Source of the DNA: Rhodosorus marinus CCMP1338
Taxonomy: Eukaryota; Plantae; Rhodophyta
Assembly: GCA_029953675.1 (NCBI GenBank)
Contig: JAMWBK010000002.1
Span: 3,038,001 to 3,102,000, forward strand
Direction: 5' to 3'
Length of the DNA: 64,000 bases
Position 1 is the first letter of the stretch; the number at the start of each line of letters is the position of its first letter. Positions 16,165 to 31,505 of the stretch are shown piece after piece. The notes below the pieces were generated by a model. The model was not told where the DNA came from and did not search any database. It saw nothing but the letters and a program-made list of their open reading frames with translations. The position numbers were made by a program, and so were the translations under genes.

Positions 16165-17060
16165 TGCGCCTCTAGGTGTTTGTTCTAAATCTGATATCTG
16201 AAAAACTCGGTTTCAGCACTCTTCCCACGCGTTTTCTAGTAGCTTCTCGTGAAATGAAAGCACGTGCCCGTTAAGTTTTGCCCTGGTTGCGAAGATCTTT
16301 TCCACTTGCTGACATCTCTCCTTAGCTATGCCCTCGTGTACAGAGCTGACATGAACCCCGAGATGACTCTTGTGCATAAACTTGCCGTTACAATGTTTAC
16401 AAATGAAATTTCGCTCTCCAAGACGCGCAACTGGATAGTGCGTTTTCAAATCGAACCTCATCTTGTAACCAGCTCCACGGGTCGGGCAAGTACTCAAGTG
16501 AGTTCTCGATCTGCATTAGGGGGTTCTTTCACCCGCTGATAAAAAATCATATAGCCCAGATTTGCTGCTCAGATAGGTTCAGTCGCTTGTAATGGTAAAT
16601 TTAACCGTAATTGACAGCAAACGCAACCCTAGCGTTCGTGAAAATGGTCTCCATCAACCACAGAACAGTACCGCTTTCCGTACTGGGACTTTGAAGTTCG
16701 TTTCTCGAATCCATTCATAACCCGGTGAGCTCAAAGTTCCCGATGAATACTTGGAAGGTTTGGCGAACGTTGTTGACCAAAAAGACACGTTCAAATCCTA
16801 GCCTTCTTTTTGTCCCCGTCCACGCATGTAGCCTTTCATCTGATCCCGGAGAACACATCACTATCCTCACTTTTCTTTGCGAGTAGGAGCACGGGGGAGT
16901 TTCCTCTCCGTCCTACGAAGATGATAAAAAGTGTCTTGGAGCGGATAGCAAGAAGACAACGGAAGATTCCGTATTGGTGTGCACCTAATCCATCAGAAAG
17001 GTTCTCGGGCGCTCGGGCTCCTTCTATGTTTATCATGAGCTCTCCATGGTACTAAATTCA
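16165..17060 (-). pseudogene. Decayed fourth copy of the C2H2 zinc-finger family
   Basis: Broken fingers (CKHCNGKFMHKSHLGVHVSSVH intact; the others have lost ligands). Upstream frameshifted fragments FIGNFELTGL, SQYGKRYCSVVDG and NARVAFAVNY match FAGNFNISKV, SQFGKDYSFVVEG and AREAFAFLHY of the intact paralogs. Confidence 0.8.
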
Positions 17061-17506
17061 ATATTTCTCTAAGAAACAGCAGATTGGGTCACCACCGTCA
17101 GGGTACTTGTCTCCAAGCACGTCAAAGATCACAACAACTCCGCAACAAAAAGGCCGATGATTAGTACAATAATTACAGTACATTTTACTACACCAATTCT
17201 AACGTACTATCAAATACTTAAAATATTCACAAGGATTACATTGGCAGTATTCAATTGGTGAGAATAGTTCGTTCTTGAAGTATTCTTTTCAATTTAAGTA
17301 CACGCGCGGCACTGTGCAGGACGGTTTCTGTAAACTTTTCGGGTGTTCCACATTTGCGTGCTTGCGCACTAGGGCCAATCCATTCGTACGTGTACGGTAC
17401 AAACTATTGGTGCTGATCAGCGTACACCCCAAGCAACCTACACGCATATGATGCGCTAAAGCCCAGCTATAGGATTATTATGGCCAAAGCGGACGTAGGG
17501 ATCTTC

Positions 17507-18315
17507 TTACGCTCGACCTGCGGAACGAACCTTATCGATCGCTGGGTTAATGCTCAGTCGCGCGAAAAACGGGAATAGTAGGGCCAAGACGAGGGTCTTC
17601 TTATTCCAAAACTTGTTATCGCTTCTGTACAGTGCTCTAGCATCGGCGAAAACTCCATACCTGGTAGTTGTCAGGGTTGTCATCTCGCCGTTGTCAAGGA
17701 ACTGCGAAAACGCGTCCTACGGAACCAAGAGAAAAGTTCAATTGCTTCATAGCACAGCTCAGGAGATGCACGCTTGCTTTGGTTTCATACCTTGGTACCA
17801 TCCCACCGGATAGTGCCGCTCCTATGCACCCCATAGCCGATCACCGAACCCTCCTCTTGGAGGGCTTGCTGTGCTTTCGTAAACATAAGCTGGTCAACTG
17901 TGTAGCTGTCAGTCTTAATCCACATTTCGTCCAGCAGCACCTCTGTATAGGCATGCTCAACATATTGGGTTCCAGTGTTTAGGACCCCTCTTAAAATATC
18001 CGAAGAAATATCCACGAACACCATCCTCGCGGGTATGCCTGAACTTCTGAGCGCACTCGTGAACAGCGCGGCCTTGGTTATGCAGAAGCCTCTGCGGTTT
18101 TTCAATGTCTCAGAGGCCTTCTCATCATAGAAGCCACCCGTGAACCCGAACGTAACCTCGTCTCGAACAGCGTCGTGAATCAAAACAGCCTTTTCACGAT
18201 CCGATTTCGCGTTTACAGCTACCCTCTGCGCGAATTCTCTGATCAGCCTGCTGTCCACGTCGAGAAGCTCCGAACGTTGCAAGTAGACCTCATGCACATC
18301 TTCTACTGAATTCAT
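17507..18315 (-). CDS. Transglutaminase-like (bacterial-type) cysteine protease-fold protein; exons 18315-17791 and 17716-17507
   Basis: AVLIHDAVRDEV, GFCITKAALF (Cys), EHAYTEV (His), TDSY (Asp). A 74-nt GT-AG intron joins in frame to DAFSQF...GRA*. Confidence 0.88.
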
Positions 18316-19348
18316 CCCAGAGACTACAAAACTCCCAAAACCAAAGACCTAGCCTCTTTCTCACAGACGGAATATAATTCTGCCCTCGGAATCCATGCAA
18401 AAGGTTTTTCACTTCCACCCTAACCTCAACTAGACAGATGGGCCCGAAGTAAACCTCGCCATTATCATCGCGTCCTATCCCATTCATCTGAGAATGTCTT
18501 CCTCATCGATTTTCCGACAGCTGCGGATCAATTAAATTATTTTCTAAATTCAATATTATTGGGGAAACTTTTCATTGTAAGTGAAATTCCGTTACCGTTC
18601 CGTTTGCTGTTGGACATTGAAGCTGTGATGATGTGGTCGTGAAGTTCTAGGTGACTGGACACTGTTCATGTTCTCTCAGGTTAAGAATGGCTATGAAAGT
18701 TTGCTCAACACAAAAACCAATCGAGATGGAAAGACAGTCAGATTATCTACGGAACTTTCGACTAGCTTTTTGCACGGTGTTGAATTTTCAGTGCTTAGGC
18801 TTCAACTTCGATATGAGAATCAGGGCCCGTGGGTTGGGCGGGGAACTCCCAGTCAAAAGTTCTGGTCAAGAGCTGTCTTTCGGTGTGCGTCTTGGTTGTT
18901 TTATTCTCGAAACGTTGAAATGGCTCGTTGCTCGACCACGCAAAACCCGGGGGCTTGTGGGATGGGTTGGCATCCATGGGCGACTCAGACGGGGGTAGTG
19001 CTAATAATATAGTGTGATTTTAATCGTTTCGCGTTTTACAGCATCAATTTTCAGCTAGCTCTCGAAGTTCCGTCGTCTCCTTATTGTGCCCGCTGTTTGT
19101 CACGTAAAAAGTTCGGATCTAGCGGGCATTAAATCATCGAAAAACCCTTGCTGCCGGCATTCTACGTAGTTTTTCCAAGTACGCTGATAGCTAAAGTATC
19201 GCGTGTAAGGGGCACAGCCAGTTCAGCCTCTTACCAGCCGTACCAAACACAAACAGATCCCCTAATCTTGCACGAGGTTTCATCAAACACGCCAAAATTG
19301 CTGAGCACGCGTATTGAGGAAGTTCTCAAATTTGATACGTTTTGCGTT

Positions 19349-20746
19349 TCACGCCGTGCTGTGTATTGTACGATGCTTCTTCAAATCTGATCTCTGGAAG
19401 AACTTCTTACCACATTCTTCACAGCCATGTATTCTCTGCTTCTCATGAACTGCCAGTACGTGTCTGTTAAGCTTCGCCTTAGTTGCGAAGCCCTTTCCGC
19501 ACTGCTGACACTTTTCTTCGGCAATACCCTCATGCACAGAACTGATGTGAACTCGAAGGTGACTCTTGTGTATGAACTTGTTGCCGCAGTACTCGCAGGC
19601 AAATTTTCGTTCTCCAAGGTGCACAGTTCGATAATGTCTTTGCATCTCATATTTTCTCCTAAAAGCTGCTCCACAGATGGGGCATTGATCACTGCTAGAA
19701 CCTCGGAAATCACTACTAACCTCTTCTGTGTTCAATAGGTTCGGTTCCGTCTTACTCTCGTCATTGTCGCTAATTTGCTCTATAAAAAAGTCCTTTCCTG
19801 AATCGTCGTTGAGGAAAAACAGCTGATCCTCGTTCAACCCAATTTCGTAATCCGGAAGTGCTAGTTGTCTATAATTTGTCTTCGAATAGTACTCGAAAGC
19901 CAGCGCCTCCCTAGCCCTTTCCAGAGATTCTCCTTCAACAACGAAACTGTAGTCCTTTCCGAACTGAGACATTGAGGTTCGCCGCCCACTAGCCATGCCC
20001 GACTTAATCACTCGGGAAATGCTGAACCTTCCACTGAACACGTGGGAGGAAAATGCTGCCAATTCCTCCGTCCAAAAAGTGAGGTCATATGGATTATCTC
20101 CGCTCTCAATTGATTGGATTTTCACTTTTGCAAATTCCTCGGCGATGTCTAGAGACAATCTGCTCTTGAAGCTCGGTGGGCACTCACAAATCTGAAGGCC
20201 CCTTGCAAAACAGAAGTCGCACATTTTCTTCTCAAATATGTCCGCCGCTGAGATGGTTTCACTAGGACGTCTTAAATTGAACACTGCGTTGCTCGTGATT
20301 AAATCTCCCTCGCTTGTAACAGTTAACCTGGTCAAACTTGCGGCTTCAGAGACTGTCTCGACCCCACCAATGTAAACATTCATCTCTGAGCCCCTGCAGT
20401 CGATACAGAACCTAACATTCTCAGCACATCCGATCTCGTGCGGGTCAAAATTTCCCAAAACTGTCCCATAAACTACCCCGTCATAAGATTCCTGCGGACA
20501 GTAAAGATTCGCTCCTTTCCAATTTTTGGTAGCTGTATTCAACATATCTCCCATGGCCACTCCATCGATATCCTGGCTCTGCAGCATGACAGACTCGCTG
20601 AAGATCAGCGGGGCTGAAGAGTTCCACTCAAACAGTAGCCATTTTCTCATCCGCTCCTCGGGGACAATGCTCAGAGGCGTCCCCGCAACCGGAGTCGCCT
20701 GCGCCGGTATGTGCTCCGTCTCTAACTTTCGAGCGTAAGTCGCCAT
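19349..20746 (-). CDS. 4xC2H2 zinc-finger protein, paralog A, intronless, with uncharacterised N-terminal domain
   Basis: Four CxxC-x12-H-x3/4-H fingers at the C-terminus. The N-terminal domain aligns with paralogs B and C. Confidence 0.92.
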   Translation of the reverse strand: MATYARKLETEHIPAQATPVAGTPLSIVPEERMRKWLLFEWNSSAPLIFSESVMLQSQDIDGVAMGDMLNTATKNWKGANLYCPQESYDGVVYGTVLGNFDPHEIGCAENVRFCIDCRGSEMNVYIGGVETVSEAASLTRLTVTSEGDLITSNAVFNLRRPSETISAADIFEKKMCDFCFARGLQICECPPSFKSRLSLDIAEEFAKVKIQSIESGDNPYDLTFWTEELAAFSSHVFSGRFSISRVIKSGMASGRRTSMSQFGKDYSFVVEGESLERAREALAFEYYSKTNYRQLALPDYEIGLNEDQLFFLNDDSGKDFFIEQISDNDESKTEPNLLNTEEVSSDFRGSSSDQCPICGAAFRRKYEMQRHYRTVHLGERKFACEYCGNKFIHKSHLRVHISSVHEGIAEEKCQQCGKGFATKAKLNRHVLAVHEKQRIHGCEECGKKFFQRSDLKKHRTIHSTA

Positions 20747-22832
20747 AGCAGACTCCTCAAAAAACACTCAAAAGCCTCACTAATCCCCTCCCCCCATCCT
20801 CAAACCCAGGCGGGCACCCCAATGTCCACTTTTTTGAACTGTCCTACTCAAAAAAAAACCAGAAACCCAACCCGTCCCAACCTTAAAAAGCAAAAACAAT
20901 TAATTAATACCTTCCAGTCCTTGCTTCACGCTCCTATGAAACATTTCTACTTCTCTCTCTACTCTTCCCTCTCTCTCTCTCCCCCTCCCTTTCCAAACTT
21001 CACCTACCAACCAAACTCAATGGGCGCTCACCCTCCTTCCTCATCCACAACCTCCACAATCTACCCTTGACGAGAAACTCTCATTAAAAAAAATTTGTAC
21101 CTTCCAGCATCAAAACAAATCCCCATTTTTCTTCCCCAAAACAAATAAGAATTTTCGGACCTAGCCAAAAAAAAAAGGAAGGTTTCCCTCCAACCCCCTA
21201 ATTAATTCCCCTTAGACGAATCAGTACTGAAAAAGAAAGAAAATCAAAAATATCAGGACAGACTGTCTAACAAAAGTAATTTTTCAAAAAAAGGGGTTAA
21301 GGTTTCTATCATATTAATTGCACCGAAAGAACCTTCGCTCTTACAGTTTGTTTTCTGTGTGTTTTTGCCCCTTTTTTTTTCTTTTATTGTCTTTTACTCT
21401 TCTTTTTTTTTTTTTTGCTTTCCCGGTCTCCTTGTCTTGATCTAGATATATTTGTGTTTACCTTGGAAAGATATATTAGTATTACGAGAACTTTTACGCA
21501 ATATTGTACCTGATTTTCGATTTACGAGTCTAAATAAAGAAATTAAGACAAAGAATAGGGTTTTTTTTTGGTACTCAGCATTGTTTGTTGCTCGTAACGC
21601 CTTGGGGTTTTTACATGACAGCACTGTTTTCGCGAGTGTCAGAGGTGCGAACCGCTTTTAAAAGAGGCGTTTCATTTTAGGCTAAGATGATTGGTTGGAA
21701 TCCCGCGGACGGGATGATCGATTCTCGTGATAGAAATGCTGTGCAGAATCTTTCCGGGCATTGTATGCTGGTTTCAAAAGAATTTCGACGTTTGAGTGGG
21801 TGCGTGTGCGATGGCCTCCCGATGAGAGCACATGAAGCGTTTACGATTTTTTGTAATTTTGGACATCGAGCTAAAAAGCGCTCGAGCAGATGGCAGAGTA
21901 TTTTGGCATCCTGTGTCGTGTGGAATTCTGGTTTCGCTATCATTGGGTGAGAACTGGCCTTGTTCCGTCCGGCGGTGAATCTCATGTCCTTTGGGAGCAG
22001 TAATACATTGTTGGATGACCTAAAGTCTATCGACTAGCAGCGTGATTCATAAAGCTCGCGGGCTGGGAAGACAGCAACTAACGCACGCGGTCGGGTGGTT
22101 ACACGTATTCTTTGCGAGGAATAAAGAAGCGGGGGGGAGAACGGACATATGGGTGCGTTCACAAAACAGGCCAAAAATAATGAATTGCTTTGATTCCAAC
22201 TACTGACGCGATAACGGGCAATGATGTCGCTGAGGGTTTGTGACGTGACGTCGAATCACCCGGACTCCACACTGCCCGACGCGCGTTCGCTGCTACCTCT
22301 GGCCAATCAGCTCCACACCGTTATGACACTCATCCGTGATACTCCTCCTGCCCCTAGTCCATCGCGTTTGACGTGTCTTTTGAACTGGTCTTCTCTTCAG
22401 ACGAGTCCCGACGATGCTACTGTGTCGAGAGTTCATGAAGCTTCGGGCCTGCGATGATCTCCTTTTCCATAGACTTTTCAACTGCTTTCGACAAAAATCA
22501 GCTCCAAGAAGCGGGAGTCATCGAATGAACCAGCTGCACATCTCAGCCGGCGCCCCCCCCCCCCGCGCTTACAGACCTGATGAGCTGTGAGCTCCCATCA
22601 AGTCGGTTACTTCTGATCCGCAACCTGCTAAGAATAACTGCATCAAAGAACCCTGCCGGAAAATGTGAGCTCCTATGCGTAAACCTCTAGACAGAGCATA
22701 AATAGCGGAAGCGCTGTGTTGACCTCGTAGTTGACGAGTTCTTGTCAGCGATCTTCAAAACATGTAGACCTTGCACAGCACAGTTCCCCCTTGTCTCCAA
22801 AATGCTGCCGGAGAGCGGTTAGCCGACGCCTC

Positions 22833-24227
22833 CTATGTATTCACCAACTTCGAAGTGTGCGTCTTTAGGTGCTTCTTCACGTCCGATCTCTGGAAAAACT
22901 TTTTCCCGCAGACTTCACACCCATGGGACCGTTTCTTCTCGTGAACTGCGGAAACGTGCCGATTGAGCTTGGCCTTGGTTGCAAATCCCTTCCCGCATGA
23001 CGGACAAAATGCTTCAGATACCCCGATATGCACTGAGACGACGTGGGTGCGAAGATGCGTCTTGTGGATGAACTTTTTGTCGCAATACTCGCAAGAGAAT
23101 CCTCGTTCACCAAGATGTACTGTTCGGAAATGCCTTGTCATCTCATATTTTCTTTTGAAGGCTGACGTGCATGCCGGACAGAGGAAGTTGCGCACCTCCT
23201 TCCCAGGTTCATTGGCGGGTACGGGACCGGTCTCATCCTCTCCGCTAACAGCTTCGAACTCATGTTGTAATTCGTCAATTACGACGCCGTTGGAAATTTG
23301 TTCGTCAGAATCCAGAACCGACCACGACTCAGAATCTGGAAATGTCAGGTGCTTGTAATCCATGTTTGAGTAGTGCAAGAATGCAAACGCCTCTCGAGCT
23401 GTATCTACCACGTCTCCATAGCCATGAAAAGCGTACTCCTTCCTGTACTGCGTCATCATCGTACGAAATCCTTCGTTTCCCCAGCTACTCTTCAAGACCT
23501 TAGAAATGTTGAAGTTCCCAGCAAAAACCTTGTCCGTGTAAGTGCCGAGCTCTTGGGTCCAGAACACGCTTTCTGAAGAATCTTGCTCCATAGAAATTCT
23601 CACTGCCTCAAAGGAGCCCACTAAATCATCTTCTGTCAAACTCTTGAGCGCTGAGGAACATTCGCAAACTGGCGATCCCCGAGATTCGCAAAAATCGCAA
23701 ACTTTCTTGTCATACATATCGGTTGCTGTCAGAGCCATGGATGAGTTCTTTACCGAAAAGGTTGTATTGGACGTGATCAGGTCCCCATCTTCAGTAATAA
23801 CCAACTTTGAAAGGCTGCCCATTCCATTCGTGTCGTCAGTACCGCCAATGAAGATTACCAGCTCATTACCTCTGCAGTCGAAGCAGAACCTAGTTCTTGT
23901 TCCTTGATTCGCAAGCATCGCGTTCGAATCCATCTGGCCCAATACCGTCCCGTAGACAACGCCGTCATGCTTTTCTTGCGGAACGTACAAATTGGAACCG
24001 TACCAGTCTTGAATGATCGGGTTCAATCCTGGATTCTCTGGTGGCTCAGAATTTAGGTTCTGGAACAAAATCGACTGGCTGAACTGCAAAGAATTCGAGG
24101 ATTCTACCTCAAAAAGCAGCCACGCTTTCATGCTCTCATCAGGTACCAACCCGAGGACGGATTCACTCTCACTCGCCCTAAGCGAGTCCGACGAAGACCC
24201 AATACCCTCCTCATCTAGCACCTCCAT
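22833..24227 (-). CDS. 4xC2H2 zinc-finger protein, paralog B, intronless
   Basis: Uninterrupted 464-aa ORF with the same architecture as paralog A. Confidence 0.92.
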   Translation of the reverse strand: MEVLDEEGIGSSSDSLRASESESVLGLVPDESMKAWLLFEVESSNSLQFSQSILFQNLNSEPPENPGLNPIIQDWYGSNLYVPQEKHDGVVYGTVLGQMDSNAMLANQGTRTRFCFDCRGNELVIFIGGTDDTNGMGSLSKLVITEDGDLITSNTTFSVKNSSMALTATDMYDKKVCDFCESRGSPVCECSSALKSLTEDDLVGSFEAVRISMEQDSSESVFWTQELGTYTDKVFAGNFNISKVLKSSWGNEGFRTMMTQYRKEYAFHGYGDVVDTAREAFAFLHYSNMDYKHLTFPDSESWSVLDSDEQISNGVVIDELQHEFEAVSGEDETGPVPANEPGKEVRNFLCPACTSAFKRKYEMTRHFRTVHLGERGFSCEYCDKKFIHKTHLRTHVVSVHIGVSEAFCPSCGKGFATKAKLNRHVSAVHEKKRSHGCEVCGKKFFQRSDVKKHLKTHTSKLVNT

Positions 24228-24502
24228 TTACCCTTACTACACCCAAAACCCCAGACCAACCTTGAAACACCACCTCGGACACAGTCACACACACACAAAA
24301 AATACAACCTCCTTCTTAACCTGTCCAACGTATTTCGCCAAACATTTGGCGACTCCTACGAACCTCCTCGCATACTACAGGACACACAACTCATCCATTG
24401 TCTTATTATTCTTATCCTTCTTCCGCACACAATACCCTCCTCATCTAGCACCTCCATTTACCCTTACTACACCCAAAAACCCAGACCAACCTTGAAACAC
24501 CA
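24200..24502. repeat. 73-bp direct duplication (24200-24272 and 24430-24502) covering the start codon of paralog B
   Basis: 72 of 73 positions identical by eye; offset 230 bp. Confidence 0.95.
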
Positions 24503-25493
24503 ATACAATCCAACTTGTTCATCCACACCAGCCCCACCTTTACCCGTAGATACGTTTCCGCCCACCCCCTGTAAATATATTACAAATTTTCTCCGAATTC
24601 GATATTTCCGTGCACTTCCGCAAAATCCCCACAAGTATTCTCTCCCTTAGTACGTTTGATGCTCTAGGCTCTTGCACGGTACGCATTCTCGAAGGAGAAT
24701 GTCACACAGAACCTGGTTATAAGAAACAGCTGGTTATGACTATGAAGACATAAGAGACATATCGTAGCTTAAAGGTCCCATTGAGTTCTCAATCGAAGGT
24801 TGGAAAGACATGCACCCAGTGCTTCCCCATGAACTGACTGACAAATCCCACCCGAAAAGAGGCCAGTCCCTCTGGTGGTTTTTGTTTGGTGATTGTTTTT
24901 AGTACATTTTTGGGTCTCTTCCGAGTGGAGGGAGAAAAAAGCAGATACTGCCCGTTGGCCGACTCATGCAGATGGGTGTGCGCAAGCAGTGAGGAGGAGG
25001 AATTACCCTGCCATTATGCGGGATTTTTGACGCATTTGAGCTCAATTTGGGTACTTTATAGTGCGATATTCAGAATCTAGGCAATCGCGAGTGAGCTTGC
25101 ATCATCTTCGTGGGAATGGACGTGATACGGTTCTCCGTGCTTTGCATCTAGAAATACGGCCAGGTGGAAGTCAAGATCGGTCCAACAATCATGAAGGTAA
25201 GCTCTACTTTATAAATAGTCAGAGAGAATCCCTCGCTCGCCTCTCCACGCGCGGCCTCCAGTTGAGCTGCAGGACAACTTGGCGTTGCATTATTCACGTC
25301 AGGTCCCTCACTGTGTAAAACCTCCACAGGCACTCTGACCTCACTTCTCTCTACTGAAATGCGTGCTAATATTGAACCCTAATATGAATACGGAGAAGCG
25401 GTTACTCCGCAAGAAAAACGCAAAAACCCAACACTACACTCTGCGCGTGACTACTAAGCCATTCGACAATGACGATGCGGTCTATTTGATCTG

Positions 25494-26984
25494 TTACGTC
25501 ACTCTCGAGTGCGAACTACTCGAACCACCATGCGTGACAACATGCTTCTTCAGGTCAGACCGCTGGAAAAATTCCTTGCCGCACTCCTCGCACCGATGTA
25601 GTCTTCGCTTTTCATGAACGGCGAGCACGTGTCTATTCAGTTTCGCCCGAGTCGCAAATCCCTTTCCGCATTCCTTACACACGGCGTGAGAAACTCCATG
25701 GTGCACGGAGCTAGTGTGGTCCCGCAGGTGGGTCTTGTGAATGAACTTCTTGCTACAGAACTCGCACGTAAAGCCTCGCTCCCCCAAGTGCACAGTTCGA
25801 TAATGTCTCTTCATCTCGTACTTCCTCATAAATATACCGCCGCACAGAGGGCATTGATTGTCTCGAGTCGGTGTGTCGGCCGTCTTCGGTGAACTTACTC
25901 CGTCGGCCGTCTTCGGTGTACTTACTCCGTCGGCAGTCTTCGGTGTACTTACTCCGTCGCCCTCGCTGGGAGGATCAATTTCCTCCACTTGCTCAAACAC
26001 ACGCTTACGGGATTCCTGCACAGCCTTCTGGATTGTCTGAATCTCTTCGAACTGGTTGTGTGAGTCTGGCGCCAAAAGCATTCGGCAGCTAACCTTCGAA
26101 TGATGGCTACAAGCGAATGCCCTCTTGGCCGCCTCAATTTGCTCTCCACTTGCTAACATCGCATACCGCTTTGCGAACTGAGAAGTTGTACTACTTTGCA
26201 TGTTAGTCTTCAAATCTGAGTAAAAAGATTTCGACACGTAGTACACCCCTGATTTAGCACGGCAAGTGAAGTCTGCTAACTCCGGCGTGAAAAAAACAGT
26301 GGTCAGGCCGGTGGCACGCTGCTCTGCCATCTGTCTATCAAATGACTGTCTCACAATCTGATAATCTTCCTTAATGTTCATTTTAGACCGCATCTTGAAG
26401 CTTGACGGACACTGACAAATTCGCTCTCCACGTGCACAACAAAAGTCACACACCTTTTTGTCCACAACCGTCATCGTTGACAAAATATAAGATGGTTGCT
26501 TTACGTCAAAGGTCACTGTGGATGTCATGATGTCCCCGTCATCACTCAGATAACTCTTCGAAAGCCACCCACGACCAGAATTGTCGTCAACGCCACCAAA
26601 GTGCACCATCCAGGTAGGGCTTTTACAATCAAAAGCAAACCTCATTCTCGTCGCCTTTTCAACTACGCGGCTCTCTGCATCCATTCTTCCGAGGACGGTG
26701 CCATAAATAATCCCATCACGGAACTCTTGCGGGCAGTACAAAAGGCTTCCTAGCCATTCATCGGGAACAGTATCCGGTACATCACCTTCATTAGCTTGAG
26801 CGTCTAAAGACATCCACATAGCTGACTGCTCGATACACAAAGGTGTTGAAGAATCCACCTCGAAAAGAAGCCACGACTTCATCATTTCGTGCGGGATCAG
26901 ACTGTAAGGCGCGACCGCATTACCATCATCCGACCGCAGCGTATCCCACGAAGAAGAACTCGGTTCTGAACGAACGGCAAACAT
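25494..26984 (-). CDS. 4xC2H2 zinc-finger protein, paralog C, intronless
   Basis: Uninterrupted 496-aa ORF with the same architecture. Confidence 0.92.
   Translation of the reverse strand: MFAVRSEPSSSSWDTLRSDDGNAVAPYSLIPHEMMKSWLLFEVDSSTPLCIEQSAMWMSLDAQANEGDVPDTVPDEWLGSLLYCPQEFRDGIIYGTVLGRMDAESRVVEKATRMRFAFDCKSPTWMVHFGGVDDNSGRGWLSKSYLSDDGDIMTSTVTFDVKQPSYILSTMTVVDKKVCDFCCARGERICQCPSSFKMRSKMNIKEDYQIVRQSFDRQMAEQRATGLTTVFFTPELADFTCRAKSGVYYVSKSFYSDLKTNMQSSTTSQFAKRYAMLASGEQIEAAKRAFACSHHSKVSCRMLLAPDSHNQFEEIQTIQKAVQESRKRVFEQVEEIDPPSEGDGVSTPKTADGVSTPKTADGVSSPKTADTPTRDNQCPLCGGIFMRKYEMKRHYRTVHLGERGFTCEFCSKKFIHKTHLRDHTSSVHHGVSHAVCKECGKGFATRAKLNRHVLAVHEKRRLHRCEECGKEFFQRSDLKKHVVTHGGSSSSHSRVT
25875..25959 (-). 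repeat. 27-bp coding minisatellite x3 (GVSTPKTAD) in the linker of paralog C
   Basis: GTCGGCCGTCTTCGGTGTACTTACTCC-type unit starting at 25875, 25902 and 25929. Confidence 0.9.
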
Positions 26985-27439
26985 CGTCAGCAGCTCAAGT
27001 CTTTAAAAACTTCTGCTGCAACAATTCTGAAACACCTTTCCCAACCGCTCCAGCTTACACGGCACGCAAAACCGACCAACAACCAACCAATGAAAATGGA
27101 TCCCACTCTAACACCCTAGCCTCACCTTCTTCCTTTCCCCCTCCCTCCCCCTACCCCCAGCCCCCCTCCCCCGGGCTTCCCCTCTTCACAAACCAAAGTA
27201 CCCACAACAACAAAAACGAAACGAGTAAACGCCTCGTCGCAAAAAATGGCCCAAACCCCCCGCTAACCAAAACAGACTATTAGCCAAGACCTCCTCAACA
27301 TCTCCATACCTTAACAACCGCCACCTCCTCGATAACCACCCAAAGTCCAACCTTTCTCCCTCCCTCTTACCACAGTACCAAAGTACCAAAGTACCAAAAG
27401 TACGGGGGTCTCTTTAGCCCCGGAAAAAAAAAATGCGCA

Positions 27440-27572
27440 CCACTCCCCTTCTTTCCAACCTCGTAACCGCTCCACTCCCCTTCTTTCCAACCTCGTAACC
27501 GCTCCACTCCCCTTCTTTCCAACCTCGTAACCGCTCCACTCCCCTTCTTGCCAACCTAATAAGCGCTCCACT
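27440..27572. repeat. 32-bp minisatellite, about 4 copies, upstream of paralog C
   Basis: CCACTCCCCTTCTTTCCAACCTCGTAACCGCT at 27440, 27472 and 27504, with a degenerate copy at 27536. No spacers. Confidence 0.95.
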
Positions 27573-29305
27573 GCCTCAAAATCTCCTCCCCCCGCCCCTT
27601 CTTTCATCGCCTTTCCATATGATATGGATATGCGCGTATCCCGTTTCAGCAGTGAGGCCTCGTCTTTTCATTATTTTCTTAAATATATTGAGCTTACTTT
27701 TATCCCCATCTAGTTTCCGGGCTATATTGAAAATACGATTCTTTTTGGAACGGGCTGCTACGATTGCGCTGATTGGCGGAGGTAAGCTATTCATGGGGCA
27801 ATGGCCGTTCAGCGGAACCTAAAAACATTTATTTTAGAGTGTAGGCGATATTATTTTAAGTCTGCGCGGGGTGCTCTGTGCTTCACGGTAATTGCTGAAT
27901 TACCAATGTTTATTGGGGGAATATTTGGTGCGAGAACCCAAACTCGGCTTGTTCTTAGTGAGACGTCGATCTAAAACTAAGGTTAAATCATCCTTAAGTA
28001 GAAAAGACACCTAAAAATGGGGGCTAGAATAAGAACCCAACGAAATTGCGCCAACGAACGGGCGAGATATTGGGGACTTTGCTGTCGGTAATCAACGAGA
28101 AAAAAGTTGATATTTAGGTTTGGCGGAAGAATAGGAAACAAAAAAAAATATCAAAGGAACCCCCAAAGTAGTCCACGAAGAAACAAGAAAAAAAAAGAAG
28201 CCCTGTGTACAAATGGAAAGGGTAGGTTTTCACCTGACGTGCAAACACTACGGGTCGAACAATACATATAAATTATAAATATAATATCTGACCGTATTTA
28301 TGGTCAAAATTATGGATTTTTTACGTCCATGTCGAATTCTCAAAATTCGAGAGCAGCTGACCGGTGTCCGACCTGTCGTCCCGGATGGACATTCTTCCAC
28401 TGGTCGAGTCGGAAAGTCGGCCCAAATATTCAATTGTTTTTTTTCGTTAGAATCAATATGGAAAGAGTAATTTTTGGTCGTGACCGAAGAAAGGCAATTT
28501 TATGCAATATGTATAGAGGGGGGTTGGTCAGCTCATCAACTCATATCTAGACACAGCCCCTTGCCCCCCCACAAAAAAGTGATTTTTTCCTCCAAAAGCC
28601 TAAAACAAAGGCAATTGGATCCTCGTAGGGCAATCCACAAAATCTCAACTCTTTGCCAGTCAATTTCGTACTCGTTCGTATACATCGATACTATTGGCAG
28701 AAACCTACTCAATTCATAAGCCAGACCGGCGTGCGCTAGCTTTCAGTACGTAACAATGATCCCTTAAATTTTCAATTAATTCAAGCGTGAAGATATTGAA
28801 TACACAAATATAAGAGAGCTATCCTGTGTAAATCAAAATAGAATAGAATAAGACTATAAAATATACTGGACTAAGGGCCACGGTATTTTTAGTGGCTATA
28901 GGTACAGCTGTATTGTTTTTATTGGACTAATATGGAATATATTTCACTTGAATTATGAGGGGTTTGTTTAGGTTTCCAAAGCCAGTCTGCAGGCTCTTAC
29001 ACTTAGTTGTTCTTTCTTTTCGTTGGCTAAGTGACTTTTTTTTTTTTTTTTTTCCAGTGGTCTCATATTTCCCCCTCGCTGGCTGTGGGTCTTGCAAAGA
29101 TGAACAACCGCTGGAAGAGTACACACTGGACTTGGGAGGTAGCCAACAAATTCGGGAACCAAGCCTAAGAAACCAACAAAGGGATGAAATCAAGCAGCTT
29201 TTGTGCCTCGGAAGAACTAAACGTATGCAAGGTAATGGCTGGCAGTGGAAACCTTATGCCTCCCCTCAAGTTTAAGCTTGGCGGAGTCCTCCAATGACAC
29301 GTGGA

Positions 29306-29336
29306 GAGGCAACTCTTGCAACCCAAGAGTTGCCTC
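29306..29336. other. Perfect 13-bp inverted repeat with 5-nt loop
   Basis: GAGGCAACTCTTG-caacc-CAAGAGTTGCCTC. Confidence 0.9.
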
Positions 29337-29499
29337 GTAGCCATTGAGAGTGCCAGTAGCGTTTAGTGTTTACCGATTAGTTAGTAGTCACACGTTTGTG
29401 ACTCACCTTTCCCTCTCGTAGGCACCCACCCGGAGTTGTTGGTTTTCCAGCAAACCAAAGACACTGCTACACCAGGGGTTTACGGCGCTACCATACAGA

Positions 29500-30840
29500 T
29501 GATATGCCGATCAGAATGGATGCCAACAAAGACAAGCTGCTCTCTGACAGTCTGAGCGGAGTTCGCTCAGTTTATGAAGGGTACATGCCTTTGGTTTCGA
29601 TTCCCCAAGAGTTTTTGATAGGCATTTCCAAGAAATCTTGCAGCCCAAGAAGACTTCAGCATGGGAATCCGAGTAGTTGTATTCTAATTTGGAAGCGTTT
29701 ATCAAAGCATTTGTCACGCGCTTACTTTTTCCGCTCGGAAAATCATTCCTCTAGCCAGGGTTCTAGCTGTTTGCTACTACTTGGCAGTTTTGCAAGACAT
29801 TTGGTGAACATAAGAGGAGGTCGGTTTTTATGCTTGAATCATGGGGTCGGAGAAGGTCCCTATTTTCTTCATGTTTTTCTTTGGGAAATGAGGAACCTAA
29901 CGGATCTGCGTAAGTTGTTGGGGACGATCTAGATGTTGATTAGCACAGGGGCTCCTCACACAGCTCAAATGTGGTGGGTTCGAATAAAGGAATAAATGGG
30001 GGGAGTCTACGGCGCTTATGCACCTGGTTTCGTCAACTCTAGAAACGATGTGCGTCTGTGCGTCGTTTGTGCAACTGTTTTTCCTGGAATTATGGTTTTC
30101 TTCACACTCTGTGCTCTCCAATTGACTCGCTGTTGCAACTGAAGTTGTTTGCTTGGTCGAACGACGCTTCGTTGCTTTTCTTTGAAGGCCTCGGTTTGCG
30201 CGATAAATGCGCTGGATTTACTTCTTGATGTTGCCATCTTGATTTCGCGCTCTCCTCTGTTTGGTGCTTAACTGCGTAGGCTTGTGATTCTGTTTCTTCT
30301 GTCTCATCGCTTCTGAGAGCGACCAATCCGTTGCCTCTCCATAAGGTCCAGTTCAGGTCTGCCTTGGTGAAGACCCACAATCTGCATACATGGAGGAGGA
30401 AAGTTGGTACGGTCTGGCAGATTGTGGTCTCCAGCAAACCCTCTCGAATGTCTGTGATGGATCTGGTCCATTAAAAGCTTAACTTCCTCGATCGGCGAGA
30501 TGTCCTGCTGCAGTTGCTTCACTCCCCCGCCTTTCACTAGGTTTAGCTGTGGGAGGCGTCCGCATCTCTCCCCATTAAGCCCGTCAAGGCGCCATGTTAC
30601 AAGAGTTGGCCGCCCGGCTTACTCTCTCCATAGTTCATACGAAGCCACATCATCCGAGACTTTTGACTGTCAGGCTCAAGCGCGGAGATGGTTGTAGAGT
30701 TCTAACAGAGTGTGCATCGCTCGATGGCGTTGTACGATTTCCATCGCGACGTAGAGCTCTAAACCACAGCATGCTCTGGAGGTCCACGCGCCTCTGCACC
30801 GCAAATTGGGTACGCTGAGGCTTCTCTTGATTCAATTATC
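29500..30840 (-). mobile_element. Possible highly decayed LTR-retrotransposon gag/protease remnant
   Basis: Stop-riddled fragments LYNHLRA*A*QSKVSDDVASYE and WRLDGLNGE (gag-like), ECEENHNSRKNSC (weak knuckle-like) and CISAVDSPHLFL (weak protease-like). The similarity is weak and judged by eye. Confidence 0.3.
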
Positions 30841-31505
30841 TGCGTTTGCTATGCACCCCTTACTGTCTACTGATAATCTCGACTGGGAAATAGCGTCTCC
30901 AGTCGGTGGGGGGATGTGATCCACGATCCGTATGCCGTGCACAGGTCAGTATCCCCTGCTCAATGACAACTAGTCCCCATGAGCGTGTTCCTACTACTAC
31001 CTACTCCCAGGGGGGGGGGCAGGCGCTTAACCAAAACCCGCCATCTGTAGAATTTACGTGACGAGCCGCTCTCCAATCATGCCATTCAACTAGAAGTATT
31101 TGATGATGATTTAGTGAGAGGCAAACAAACCCGAAGAAGCTCGCTCTATGACAACACTCCACAGTACCTCACAGCACCAAAAAGAAGCACTGATCACTCC
31201 TGAATCCAGTTTTATCCAAACCAGAAAATAGATGATATTTTAATTAAATTCAAACTATATAGAATTCACTCTCAATTCGAAAATCGGGGTTTGTAAATTA
31301 TACTTATTTCTGAAAGGGGATTGGCTGGGATCGTCTTGTGCTTCAGGATGAGTGTCTCTTAATTGGAATTGTTCCGTTGGAGTGGTTGGGCAAAGGATAT
31401 TTGAAGGCCTCGGATATGGGGGTGCGGAGTGGGACTTCTGAAGGGATGCGAGGATAGCGAAGAAATTCTTTAGACGATCAAACATGACTAACATAGCTGA
31501 AGTAG

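What the first reader, a model, noticed from the sequence alone, without database searches (positions are those of the whole stretch)
16165..26984. Tandem cluster of intronless 4xC2H2 zinc-finger genes (3 intact + 1 pseudogene): a birth-and-death TF family
Four same-strand paralogs spaced about 3 kb apart share one architecture: novel N-terminal domain, acidic linker, four fingers. All are intronless, whereas most neighbours have introns, which suggests a retroposed or otherwise intron-free founder expanded by tandem duplication. Effector domain plus finger array in a cluster with dead copies recalls KRAB/ZAD/BTB-ZNF clusters, but none of those domains is present. It may be a lineage-specific equivalent.
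Basis: partly seen in the sequence, partly recalled or inferred. Interest (0 to 1): 0.75.

Follow-up and report, generated by a model that had tools for sequence, protein, structure and literature searches.

The report
Red-alga-specific zinc-finger gene cluster
Three working genes and one dead copy of a small family found almost only in the red alga Rhodosorus sit in a row; each joins four nearly identical DNA-reading zinc fingers to a large, fast-changing, undescribed front domain, so they are probably regulators that share a DNA target but differ in how they are controlled.

Summary
On the minus strand lie three intact single-exon genes: B 19349-20746, C 22833-24227 and D 25494-26984. A decayed fourth copy lies at about 16165-16730. 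The spacing is 2.7-3.5 kb.

Each gene encodes an N-terminal domain of about 290 aa, an acidic linker and four C2H2 fingers. The window is Rhodosorus marinus CCMP1338, GCA_029953675.1.

The N-domain has no Pfam, PDB-sequence or significant Foldseek match. An exhaustive profile search of 1.84 billion proteins found 10 relatives: eight from Rhodosorus and two from unidentified Logan assemblies.

Two more sets of intronless paralogs lie on contigs 4 and 8, giving at least 8 genes.

Transcripts from other strains are colinear with the genome, so the genes are expressed and intronless.

The KRAB/ZAD analogy holds only for architecture and clustering. The base-contacting finger residues are almost identical among paralogs, and finger dN/dS is about 0.1. 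The N-domain diverges instead: 38-43% identity, with dN/dS from 0.1 to 0.77. Every gene has a 1:1 ortholog in other strains.

This is a slow, old tandem expansion of transcription factors that probably share a DNA motif, not an arms-race family. It is a new domain architecture of moderate interest.

The parts
16165..16730 (-). Pseudogene (copy A). It holds a decayed four-finger region and one vestige of the N-domain. There is an in-frame TGA at 16215-16213, and only finger 2 keeps all four zinc ligands.
   Evidence: tblastn 16180..16503 matches B at 54% and E 2e-30. Profile hits fall at 16515..16216 (positions 356-448) and at 16730..16632 (positions 257-278, E 7e-4), in different frames. The sequence was read. 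No gene is called here in the source annotation.
19349..20746 (-). Gene B: a single-exon CDS of 465 aa. Layout: N-domain, acidic linker (residues 300-354), four C2H2 fingers (19361-19684).
   Evidence: ORF; single-exon gene model of 1398 nt for 465 aa; Pfam zf-C2H2 x4, E 8.5e-18. The ortholog mRNA L009 aligns in one block to 20899..18675.
22833..24227 (-). Gene C: a single-exon CDS of 464 aa. Layout: N-domain about 23337-24158, invariant CX2CX7CXC motif at 23658-23699, fingers at 22857-23180.
   Evidence: ORF; identical to database protein P0001 on contig JAMWBK010000002.1; Pfam x4 fingers. The AF2 model of residues 1-297 has pLDDT 73.7 and pTM 0.77. The ortholog mRNA L008 aligns to 24391..22587.
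25494..26984 (-). Gene D: a single-exon CDS of 496 aa. Fingers lie at 25530-25853. The linker carries a 27-nt x3 in-frame repeat (25875-25959). The transcript spans about 25189-27081.
   Evidence: ORF; single-exon model; Pfam x4 fingers. The polyadenylated ortholog mRNA L007 aligns in one HSP of 1923 columns at 85% identity to 27081..25189. Tandem repeat found.

Best explanation
The region is one of three clusters of a small family (at least 8 genes) in the unicellular red alga Rhodosorus marinus.

Shown:
- Each protein is a compact globular N-terminal domain of about 270-290 aa, an acidic linker, and a canonical tandem array of four C2H2 fingers with 7-residue linkers.
- The N-domain model has a seven-strand beta meander, an invariant CX2C-X6/7-CXC four-cysteine motif, and then an alpha/beta part.
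- The genes are intronless and transcribed.
- The family grew by old local tandem duplications. One copy here has died.
- The fingers are strongly constrained and their base-contacting residues are nearly the same in all three paralogs.
- The N-domain has diverged to about 40% identity. Its constraint ranges from strong (D) to nearly neutral (C).

Inferred:
- The proteins are sequence-specific DNA-binding transcription factors that recognise the same or very similar site of about 12 bp.
- The acidic linker acts as an activation region.
- The paralogs differ in what the N-domain does: receiving a signal, binding a small ligand, or binding a partner, possibly with a structural zinc on the four cysteines.
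- On this reading the cluster gives several differently controlled inputs onto one shared set of target sites, rather than many different DNA specificities.
For: Architecture and fingers. Contact residues at -1, 2, 3 and 6 are F1 RYER, F2 H(S/T)H(V/T/D), F3 TAKR and F4 QSDK in B, C and D. The distant Logan relative P0012 has RYER/RAHE/TSKR/QSDR.

Domain-wise identity: paralogs are 38-43% identical in the N-domain and 72-73% in the fingers.

Selection between strains (NG86): fingers dN/dS 0.10-0.11 in all three genes; N-domain 0.095 (D), 0.36 (B), 0.77 (C); paralog dS is saturated.

Expression and lack of introns.

Tandem origin and 1:1 orthologs.

Further clusters.

Restricted distribution and new domain: 10 hits in 1.84e9 proteins, eight of them Rhodosorus and two from unidentified Logan assemblies. 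No Pfam hit, no PDB sequence hit, no Foldseek hit at E<=1e-3.

Invariant residues W36, L37, G93, R113, G148, C177, C180, C188, C190 across 9 diverse members.

One compact fold: pTM 0.77.

Acidic linkers.
Against: There is no direct evidence of DNA binding, nuclear location or any target.

The role of the N-domain rests only on its pattern of evolution. The structural hint is statistically weak: the best matches are up-and-down beta barrels (bradavidin, E 0.04, TMt 0.53; THAP4 nitrobindin, TMt 0.40).

Finger 2 position 6 differs among the paralogs (V/T/D), so their sites may not be identical.

The near-neutral rate of C's N-domain, together with a Cys-to-Gly change in finger 2 of its ortholog P0004, could mean that C is decaying rather than specialising.

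Expression is shown for orthologs in other strains, not for CCMP1338 itself.
Confidence: 0.6

Rival explanations
1. This is the first reader's view: a lineage-specific counterpart of KRAB/ZAD-type zinc-finger clusters. A conserved effector domain would recruit one cofactor, while the finger arrays diversify rapidly to follow changing targets such as mobile elements, with fast gene birth and death.
For: An N-terminal associated domain plus a C2H2 array; tandem same-strand clusters at three loci; one pseudogene and several members with dead fingers. The N-domain carries four invariant cysteines, as ZAD does.
Against: The base-contacting residues are almost invariant among paralogs and finger dN/dS is about 0.1. 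The N-domain, not the fingers, is the divergent part. The finger number is fixed at four. There are only about 8 genes. Every gene has a 1:1 ortholog in other strains and paralog dS is saturated. There is no hit to KRAB, zf-AD, BTB or SCAN even at E<=10.
Confidence: 0.07
2. These are one-component sensor transcription factors. The beta-meander part of the N-domain would be a calycin-like (avidin/lipocalin/nitrobindin-type) barrel that binds a small molecule or haem. Paralogs would sense different ligands and act on the same DNA sites. This is a sharper version of the best explanation.
For: Seven consecutive antiparallel strands (residues 77-175) are modelled with pLDDT 75-90. The only Foldseek matches with probability above 0.8 are bradavidin barrels, and the nitrobindin domain of the DNA-binding protein THAP4 also appears. 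DNA specificity is conserved while the N-domain diverges.
Against: All Foldseek E-values are at least 0.015 and TM-scores normalised to the query are at most 0.26. The model coordinates could not be inspected for a cavity. No ligand-binding residues are known.
Confidence: 0.15
3. The N-domain is a zinc-stabilised dimerisation or partner-binding module. The paralogs would form homo- or heterodimers on paired sites.
For: The four-cysteine motif is invariant in 9 of 10 members examined. Zinc-dependent dimerisation by ZAD in insects is a precedent, cited from established knowledge.
Against: The domain is three to four times larger than ZAD and shares no detectable sequence or fold with it. No coiled coil or other interface was predicted. 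Nothing was tested.
Confidence: 0.12
4. The genes derive from a mobile element or virus, or from a retroposed mRNA, and the N-domain is a domesticated foreign protein.
For: All copies are intronless in a genome with about 3 introns per gene (PMC10250338). Distribution is very narrow.
Against: No transposase, integrase or viral Pfam hit. No significant match among predicted viral structures. No terminal repeats, poly(A) remnant or target-site duplication around the genes. GC content matches the flanks. No intron-bearing parent gene exists in the family.
Confidence: 0.05

Closest known systems
ZAD-C2H2 zinc-finger genes of insects (zf-AD, PF07776)
   Same: A lineage-restricted N-terminal domain with four conserved cysteines, followed by a linker and a C-terminal C2H2 array. 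Genes lie in same-strand tandem clusters.
   Different: There is no sequence match to zf-AD. The domain here is about 290 aa rather than about 80. Its cysteines are packed as CX2C-X6/7-CXC rather than as two separated pairs. The family has about 8 genes, not about 90. Finger contact residues are conserved rather than diversified.
KRAB-C2H2 zinc-finger clusters of tetrapods
   Same: The effector-plus-finger-array architecture, tandem clusters and the occurrence of pseudogenes.
   Different: There is no KRAB domain. The number of fingers is fixed at four. The fingers are under strong purifying selection and the N-domain is the variable part. Orthology between strains is 1:1. There is no sign of an arms race.
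THAP4 (THAP zinc finger plus nitrobindin beta-barrel)
   Same: A zinc-dependent DNA-binding module fused to an up-and-down beta structure. The nitrobindin domain appears among the weak Foldseek matches.
   Different: The domain order is reversed and the zinc-finger type is different. The structural match is not significant (E 0.25, TMq 0.26). No homology is shown.
Generic red-algal C2H2 transcription factors
   Same: C2H2 is the most abundant transcription-factor class in non-cyanidiophyte red algae, at 20-40% of transcription factors (PMC12567131). These genes are annotated only as 'C2H2-type domain-containing protein' or 'hypothetical protein'.
   Different: They carry a large conserved N-terminal domain found only in Rhodosorus and two unidentified assemblies. 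They form three tandem clusters.

Membership tests
C2H2 zinc-finger proteins (PF00096) | CX2CX12HX3-5H units scoring above the Pfam gathering score | tested here: met
   Four units per protein, scoring 48-64 bits against a cut-off of 25.2. The ligand patterns are listed.
C2H2 zinc-finger proteins (PF00096) | Tandem array with canonical 7-residue H-to-C linkers, as in DNA-binding polydactyl proteins | tested here: met
   The linkers LGERxFx, xGxxxxx and EKxRxHx are each 7 residues.
C2H2 zinc-finger proteins (PF00096) | Sequence-specific DNA binding | not testable with these tools
   This needs DAP-seq, PBM or EMSA. A recognition-code guess (GCAGKNNGNGCG) gave 3 window hits against 0.59 expected, none of them in the family's promoters.
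KRAB-ZNF | N-terminal KRAB domain (PF01352) | tested here: not met
   No hit at E<=1 on the full proteins or at E<=10 on nine N-domains.
KRAB-ZNF | Diversification of base-contacting residues among clustered paralogs | tested here: not met
   Contact residues are identical at 14 of 16 positions in B, C and D. Finger dN/dS is 0.10-0.11.
ZAD-ZNF | zf-AD domain (PF07776) | tested here: not met
   No Pfam hit. The four-cysteine motif has different spacing and context.
BTB-ZNF / SCAN-ZNF | BTB (PF00651) or SCAN (PF02023) domain | tested here: not met
   No Pfam hit.
Calycin-like beta barrels (avidin, lipocalin, nitrobindin) | Closed 8-10-stranded up-and-down barrel with a significant structural match | tested here: inconclusive
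   The model has a seven-strand meander. The best Foldseek matches are bradavidin (E 0.04, prob 0.9, TMt 0.53) and nitrobindin (E 0.25); none reaches E<=1e-3.
Processed retrogene | Intron-bearing parent gene, poly(A) remnant and flanking target-site duplication | tested here: not met
   All 8 family members are intronless. No flanking direct repeats were found and no alignable flanks. The age of the duplicates would have erased such marks, so absence is weak evidence.
Birth-and-death multigene family | Tandem duplicates forming clades by location, plus pseudogenes or degenerate members | tested here: met
   Clusters are monophyletic, with bootstrap 94 and 100. There is one pseudogene, a dead finger 1 in c4_420 and its orthologs, and only two fingers left in c8_432. 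Turnover is slow: orthologs are 1:1 and paralog dS is saturated.

The most novel reading that the evidence does not exclude
The N-terminal domain is a new ligand-binding fold: a beta barrel with a zinc knuckle. The family would then be a red-algal analogue of nuclear receptors, that is, one-component sensor transcription factors in which tandem paralogs bind the same DNA element but each responds to a different small molecule or redox/metal signal.
Probability: 0.12. Interest if true: 0.65.

Novelty: new variant of a known kind. Interest (0 to 1): 0.4.

Why it matters
Red algae lost much of the ancestral gene inventory and rely heavily on C2H2 factors, yet almost none of these has been characterised.

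This family gives a clearly bounded, undescribed domain that could be added to domain databases. It has only about 8 members, each with 1:1 orthologs across strains.

It also shows an unusual evolutionary pattern for clustered zinc-finger genes: the DNA-reading part is fixed and the accessory domain is variable. That makes it a workable system for asking how a small-genome unicellular alga diversifies regulatory inputs without diversifying DNA motifs.

It is not a general breakthrough. The proteins are already in public databases as hypothetical proteins, and the function of the new domain remains inferred.

Tried and rejected
1. AlphaFold2 of the N-domain with only six close sequences gave pLDDT 39 and was discarded. 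Adding distant members raised it to 73.7.
2. The word-indexed homology search with the broader N-domain profile added nothing new and missed known members. With the finger-only profile it returned only generic C2H2 proteins at 30-42% identity.
3. The profile search against PDB sequences gave only chance hits: SecA at E 0.37.
4. Foldseek against viral predicted structures found nothing at E<=1e-3.
5. The JGI metagenome scan failed with the diverse alignment because it had no conserved stretch. With the close alignment it found no relative.
6. Aligning the 400 nt upstream of B, C and D showed purine-rich sequence but no shared promoter block.
7. A recognition-code motif guess was not informative.
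8. ORFs downstream of the C ortholog in transcript L008 are not conserved in the window; there is an in-frame stop and 38% identity. A hidden gene between C and B was therefore rejected.
9. The organism behind Logan runs SRR22824290 and SRR22824282 could not be identified. The run numbers appear in no searchable paper.
10. The Rfam and tRNA scans of the window were empty.
11. Remains of the first 250 residues of the pseudogene could not be detected. The 770 nt between its last vestige and the next gene is just the right length for them.
Full report
**What is in the sequence**

The minus strand of the region carries three long ORFs at 19349..20767, 22833..24227 and 25494..26984. I call them B, C and D. 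They are 42-47% identical over their whole length. Each has four Pfam zf-C2H2 units (48-64 bits, cut-off 25.2) at the C-terminus and no other family above its cut-off.

A 300-nt direct-repeat family covering the finger region has four copies, with start-to-start spacing of 3196, 3496 and 2673 nt.

The linkers between the N-terminal part and the fingers are acidic: D+E 13-15 against K+R 2-8.

**The fourth copy is a pseudogene**

tblastn finds only the finger region, at 16180..16503 (54% to B, E 2e-30). Reading the sequence shows the following:
- an in-frame TGA at 16215-16213, replacing the glycine codon of 'CGK' in finger 4;
- loss of the second Cys and second His of finger 1;
- loss of the second Cys of finger 3;
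- loss of the first Cys and both His of finger 4.

Only finger 2 is intact.

A profile of the family also hits a 22-residue vestige of the N-domain (positions 257-278) at 16730..16632. It lies in another frame and is colinear with the fingers (E 7e-4 in a local search). Nothing further upstream is recognisable. The 770 nt up to the next gene would just fit the missing 256 residues.

The source annotation calls no gene here. An unrelated Transglut_core gene with one intron lies at 17507..18315, between this pseudogene and B.

**Where the window comes from**

Protein C is identical to a database protein on contig JAMWBK010000002.1 of assembly GCA_029953675.1. This is the chromosome-level nuclear genome of Rhodosorus marinus CCMP1338. 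It is 31.2 Mb, with 8392 genes and 24,821 introns (PMC10250338).

**Intronless and expressed**

The source annotation models B (465 aa, starting at the ATG at 20746), C (464 aa) and D (496 aa) as single exons.

mRNA contigs from other Rhodosorus strains in MMETSP align to the window in single colinear blocks that include the UTRs:
- the D-like, polyadenylated contig L007 aligns to 27081..25189 at 85% identity in one HSP;
- the B-like contig L009 aligns to 20899..18675;
- the C-like contig L008 aligns to 24391..22587.

Orthologs of all three genes are therefore transcribed, and there are no introns even in the UTRs.

Across the three loci examined, 0 of 8 family genes have introns, against 9 of 11 complete neighbouring genes (Fisher p = 7e-4).

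**The family is larger than the window shows**

An exhaustive HMMER search with an N-domain profile against 1.84 billion representative proteins found only 10 hits at E<=1e-3. Eight are Rhodosorus proteins, from the genome or from MMETSP strains. Two (P0011, P0012) come from Logan assemblies of runs SRR22824290 and SRR22824282, whose organism I could not identify.

Looking up the genomic hits revealed two further sets of paralogs in the same genome:
- On contig 4 there are three same-strand intronless genes of 418, 420 and 417 aa, with an unrelated lysine-rich gene among them.
- On contig 8 there are two more, of 418 and 432 aa, about 5.3 kb apart with an unrelated ubiquitin-conjugating-enzyme (UQ_con) gene between them. 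One is very divergent and one retains only two fingers.

A neighbour-joining tree shows that each physical cluster is one clade: bootstrap 94 for the window cluster and 100 for contig 4. Every gene pairs 1:1 with an ortholog from another strain at bootstrap 100.

Growth was therefore by local tandem duplication, and it predates the split of the strains. Paralog synonymous sites are saturated (pS about 0.8). The upstream regions no longer align.

**The N-terminal domain**

It has none of the following:
- a Pfam match, even at E<=10 for nine diverse members;
- a relative among PDB sequences;
- a relative in JGI metagenome contigs.

Across nine diverse members the invariant residues are W36, L37, G93, R113, G148 and four cysteines, C177, C180, C188 and C190 (C numbering). 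The cysteines form a CX2C-X6/7-CXC motif.

With those nine sequences AlphaFold2 gives a usable model: mean pLDDT 73.7 and pTM 0.77. It has a short N-terminal helix, seven consecutive antiparallel strands (residues 77-175), the cysteine motif, three helices, a long hairpin and a final helix.

Foldseek finds nothing at E<=1e-3 in the PDB or in predicted viral structures. The best weak matches are up-and-down barrels: bradavidin (E 0.04, prob 0.9, TMt 0.53), the nitrobindin domain of THAP4, and nitrophorin. This is a hint of a calycin-like barrel, not evidence.

**Which part evolves**

This point changes the interpretation. The base-contacting positions (-1, 2, 3, 6) are as follows in B, C and D:

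| Finger | Contact residues |
|---|---|
| 1 | RYER |
| 2 | H(S/T)H(V/T/D) |
| 3 | TAKR |
| 4 | QSDK |

Even the distant Logan protein P0012 has RYER / RAHE / TSKR / QSDR.

Paralogs are 72-73% identical in the fingers but only 38-43% in the N-domain.

Between strains, using the mRNA contigs as orthologs, finger dN/dS is 0.10-0.11 for all three genes. N-domain dN/dS is 0.095 for D, 0.36 for B and 0.77 for C.

The DNA-reading part is therefore held fixed, and the accessory domain is what differs. This is the opposite of KRAB- or ZAD-type clusters.

**Best explanation**

These are sequence-specific transcription factors that share, or nearly share, a DNA site of about 12 bp. That is inferred from the canonical tandem C2H2 array and the conserved contacts. 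The acidic linker probably acts as an activation region.

The paralogs differ in a large N-terminal regulatory domain that receives a signal, a ligand or a partner, possibly stabilised by zinc on the four cysteines.

The descriptive part is well supported. The functional part is inference, and I put the whole at 0.6.

The rivals are set out in their own section: a KRAB-like arms race, a ligand-sensing barrel, a dimerisation module, and a mobile-element or retrogene origin. The arms-race reading is the one the data most clearly contradict.

**Birth and death**

This is supported, but in slow motion. The window has one pseudogene. c4_420 and its orthologs in two other strains share a dead finger 1. 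c8_432 has lost fingers 1-2, and P0011 has no intact fingers.

The C lineage shows a near-neutral N-domain rate. The C ortholog P0004 carries a Cys-to-Gly change in finger 2.

**Novelty**

The proteins are already public, as 'hypothetical protein' or 'C2H2-type domain-containing protein'. I found no paper describing the family.

It is a new domain architecture within the well-known class of C2H2 factors with accessory domains. Its evolutionary pattern is unusual. Interest is moderate, at 0.4.

Noticed in passing
window 24197-24272 and 24427-24502: A 76-nt segment that includes the start codon and first nine codons of gene C is duplicated 230 nt upstream at 97% identity. The upstream copy opens an out-of-frame 33-codon uORF at 24457 (MEVLDEEGIVCGRR...). 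The ortholog transcript reaches at least the equivalent of 24528, so the uORF may be transcribed.
   Followed up: partly
window 25875-25959: An in-frame 27-nt tandem repeat (3.1 copies, 96% match) encodes DGVSTPKTA x3 in the linker of gene D. The orthologs P0002 and P0003 from other strains have a single unit, so this is a strain-specific expansion.
   Followed up: partly
window 27436-27572: A 32-nt tandem repeat (4.3 copies, 95% match) lies about 350-490 nt upstream of the mapped 5' end of the D transcript. An 8-nt microrepeat sits at 27368-27403. Function unknown.
   Followed up: no
window 21943-22587: The C-ortholog transcript contig L008 continues about 640-900 nt past the stop codon of C, matching down to 21943 at 75% identity. 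Its ORFs are not conserved in the window. It is a long 3' UTR, a read-through or a non-coding transcript.
   Followed up: partly
L005 5446-13736 (contig JAMWBK010000004.1) and L006 1403-9299 (contig JAMWBK010000008.1): Two further sets of paralogs of the same family are present in the same genome (three genes and two genes), all intronless and on the same strand within each locus. c4_420 has a degenerate finger 1 that is shared by its orthologs in two other strains. c8_432 keeps only two fingers. c8_418 has lost the four-cysteine motif.
   Followed up: yes
L002 413-1747; L003 124-1251; L004 83-1210: The only family members not assigned to Rhodosorus (P0012, with four fingers; P0011, with no intact fingers) come from Logan assemblies of SRR22824290 and SRR22824282. 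The organism is unknown. Contig GC is 0.49-0.50.
   Followed up: partly
window 26985-31483: About 4.5 kb upstream of gene D has no gene in the source annotation and no long ORF. From 20 to 28 kb the plus strand has a strongly negative GC skew (-0.10 to -0.27). This reflects G-rich, purine-rich sequence on the strand that carries the genes.
   Followed up: no
L008 (protein P0004): The ortholog of gene C in another strain has Gly instead of the first Cys of finger 2. Its N-domain is only 66% identical to C, against 93% in the fingers. This is either real decay of that lineage or a transcriptome error.
   Followed up: partly
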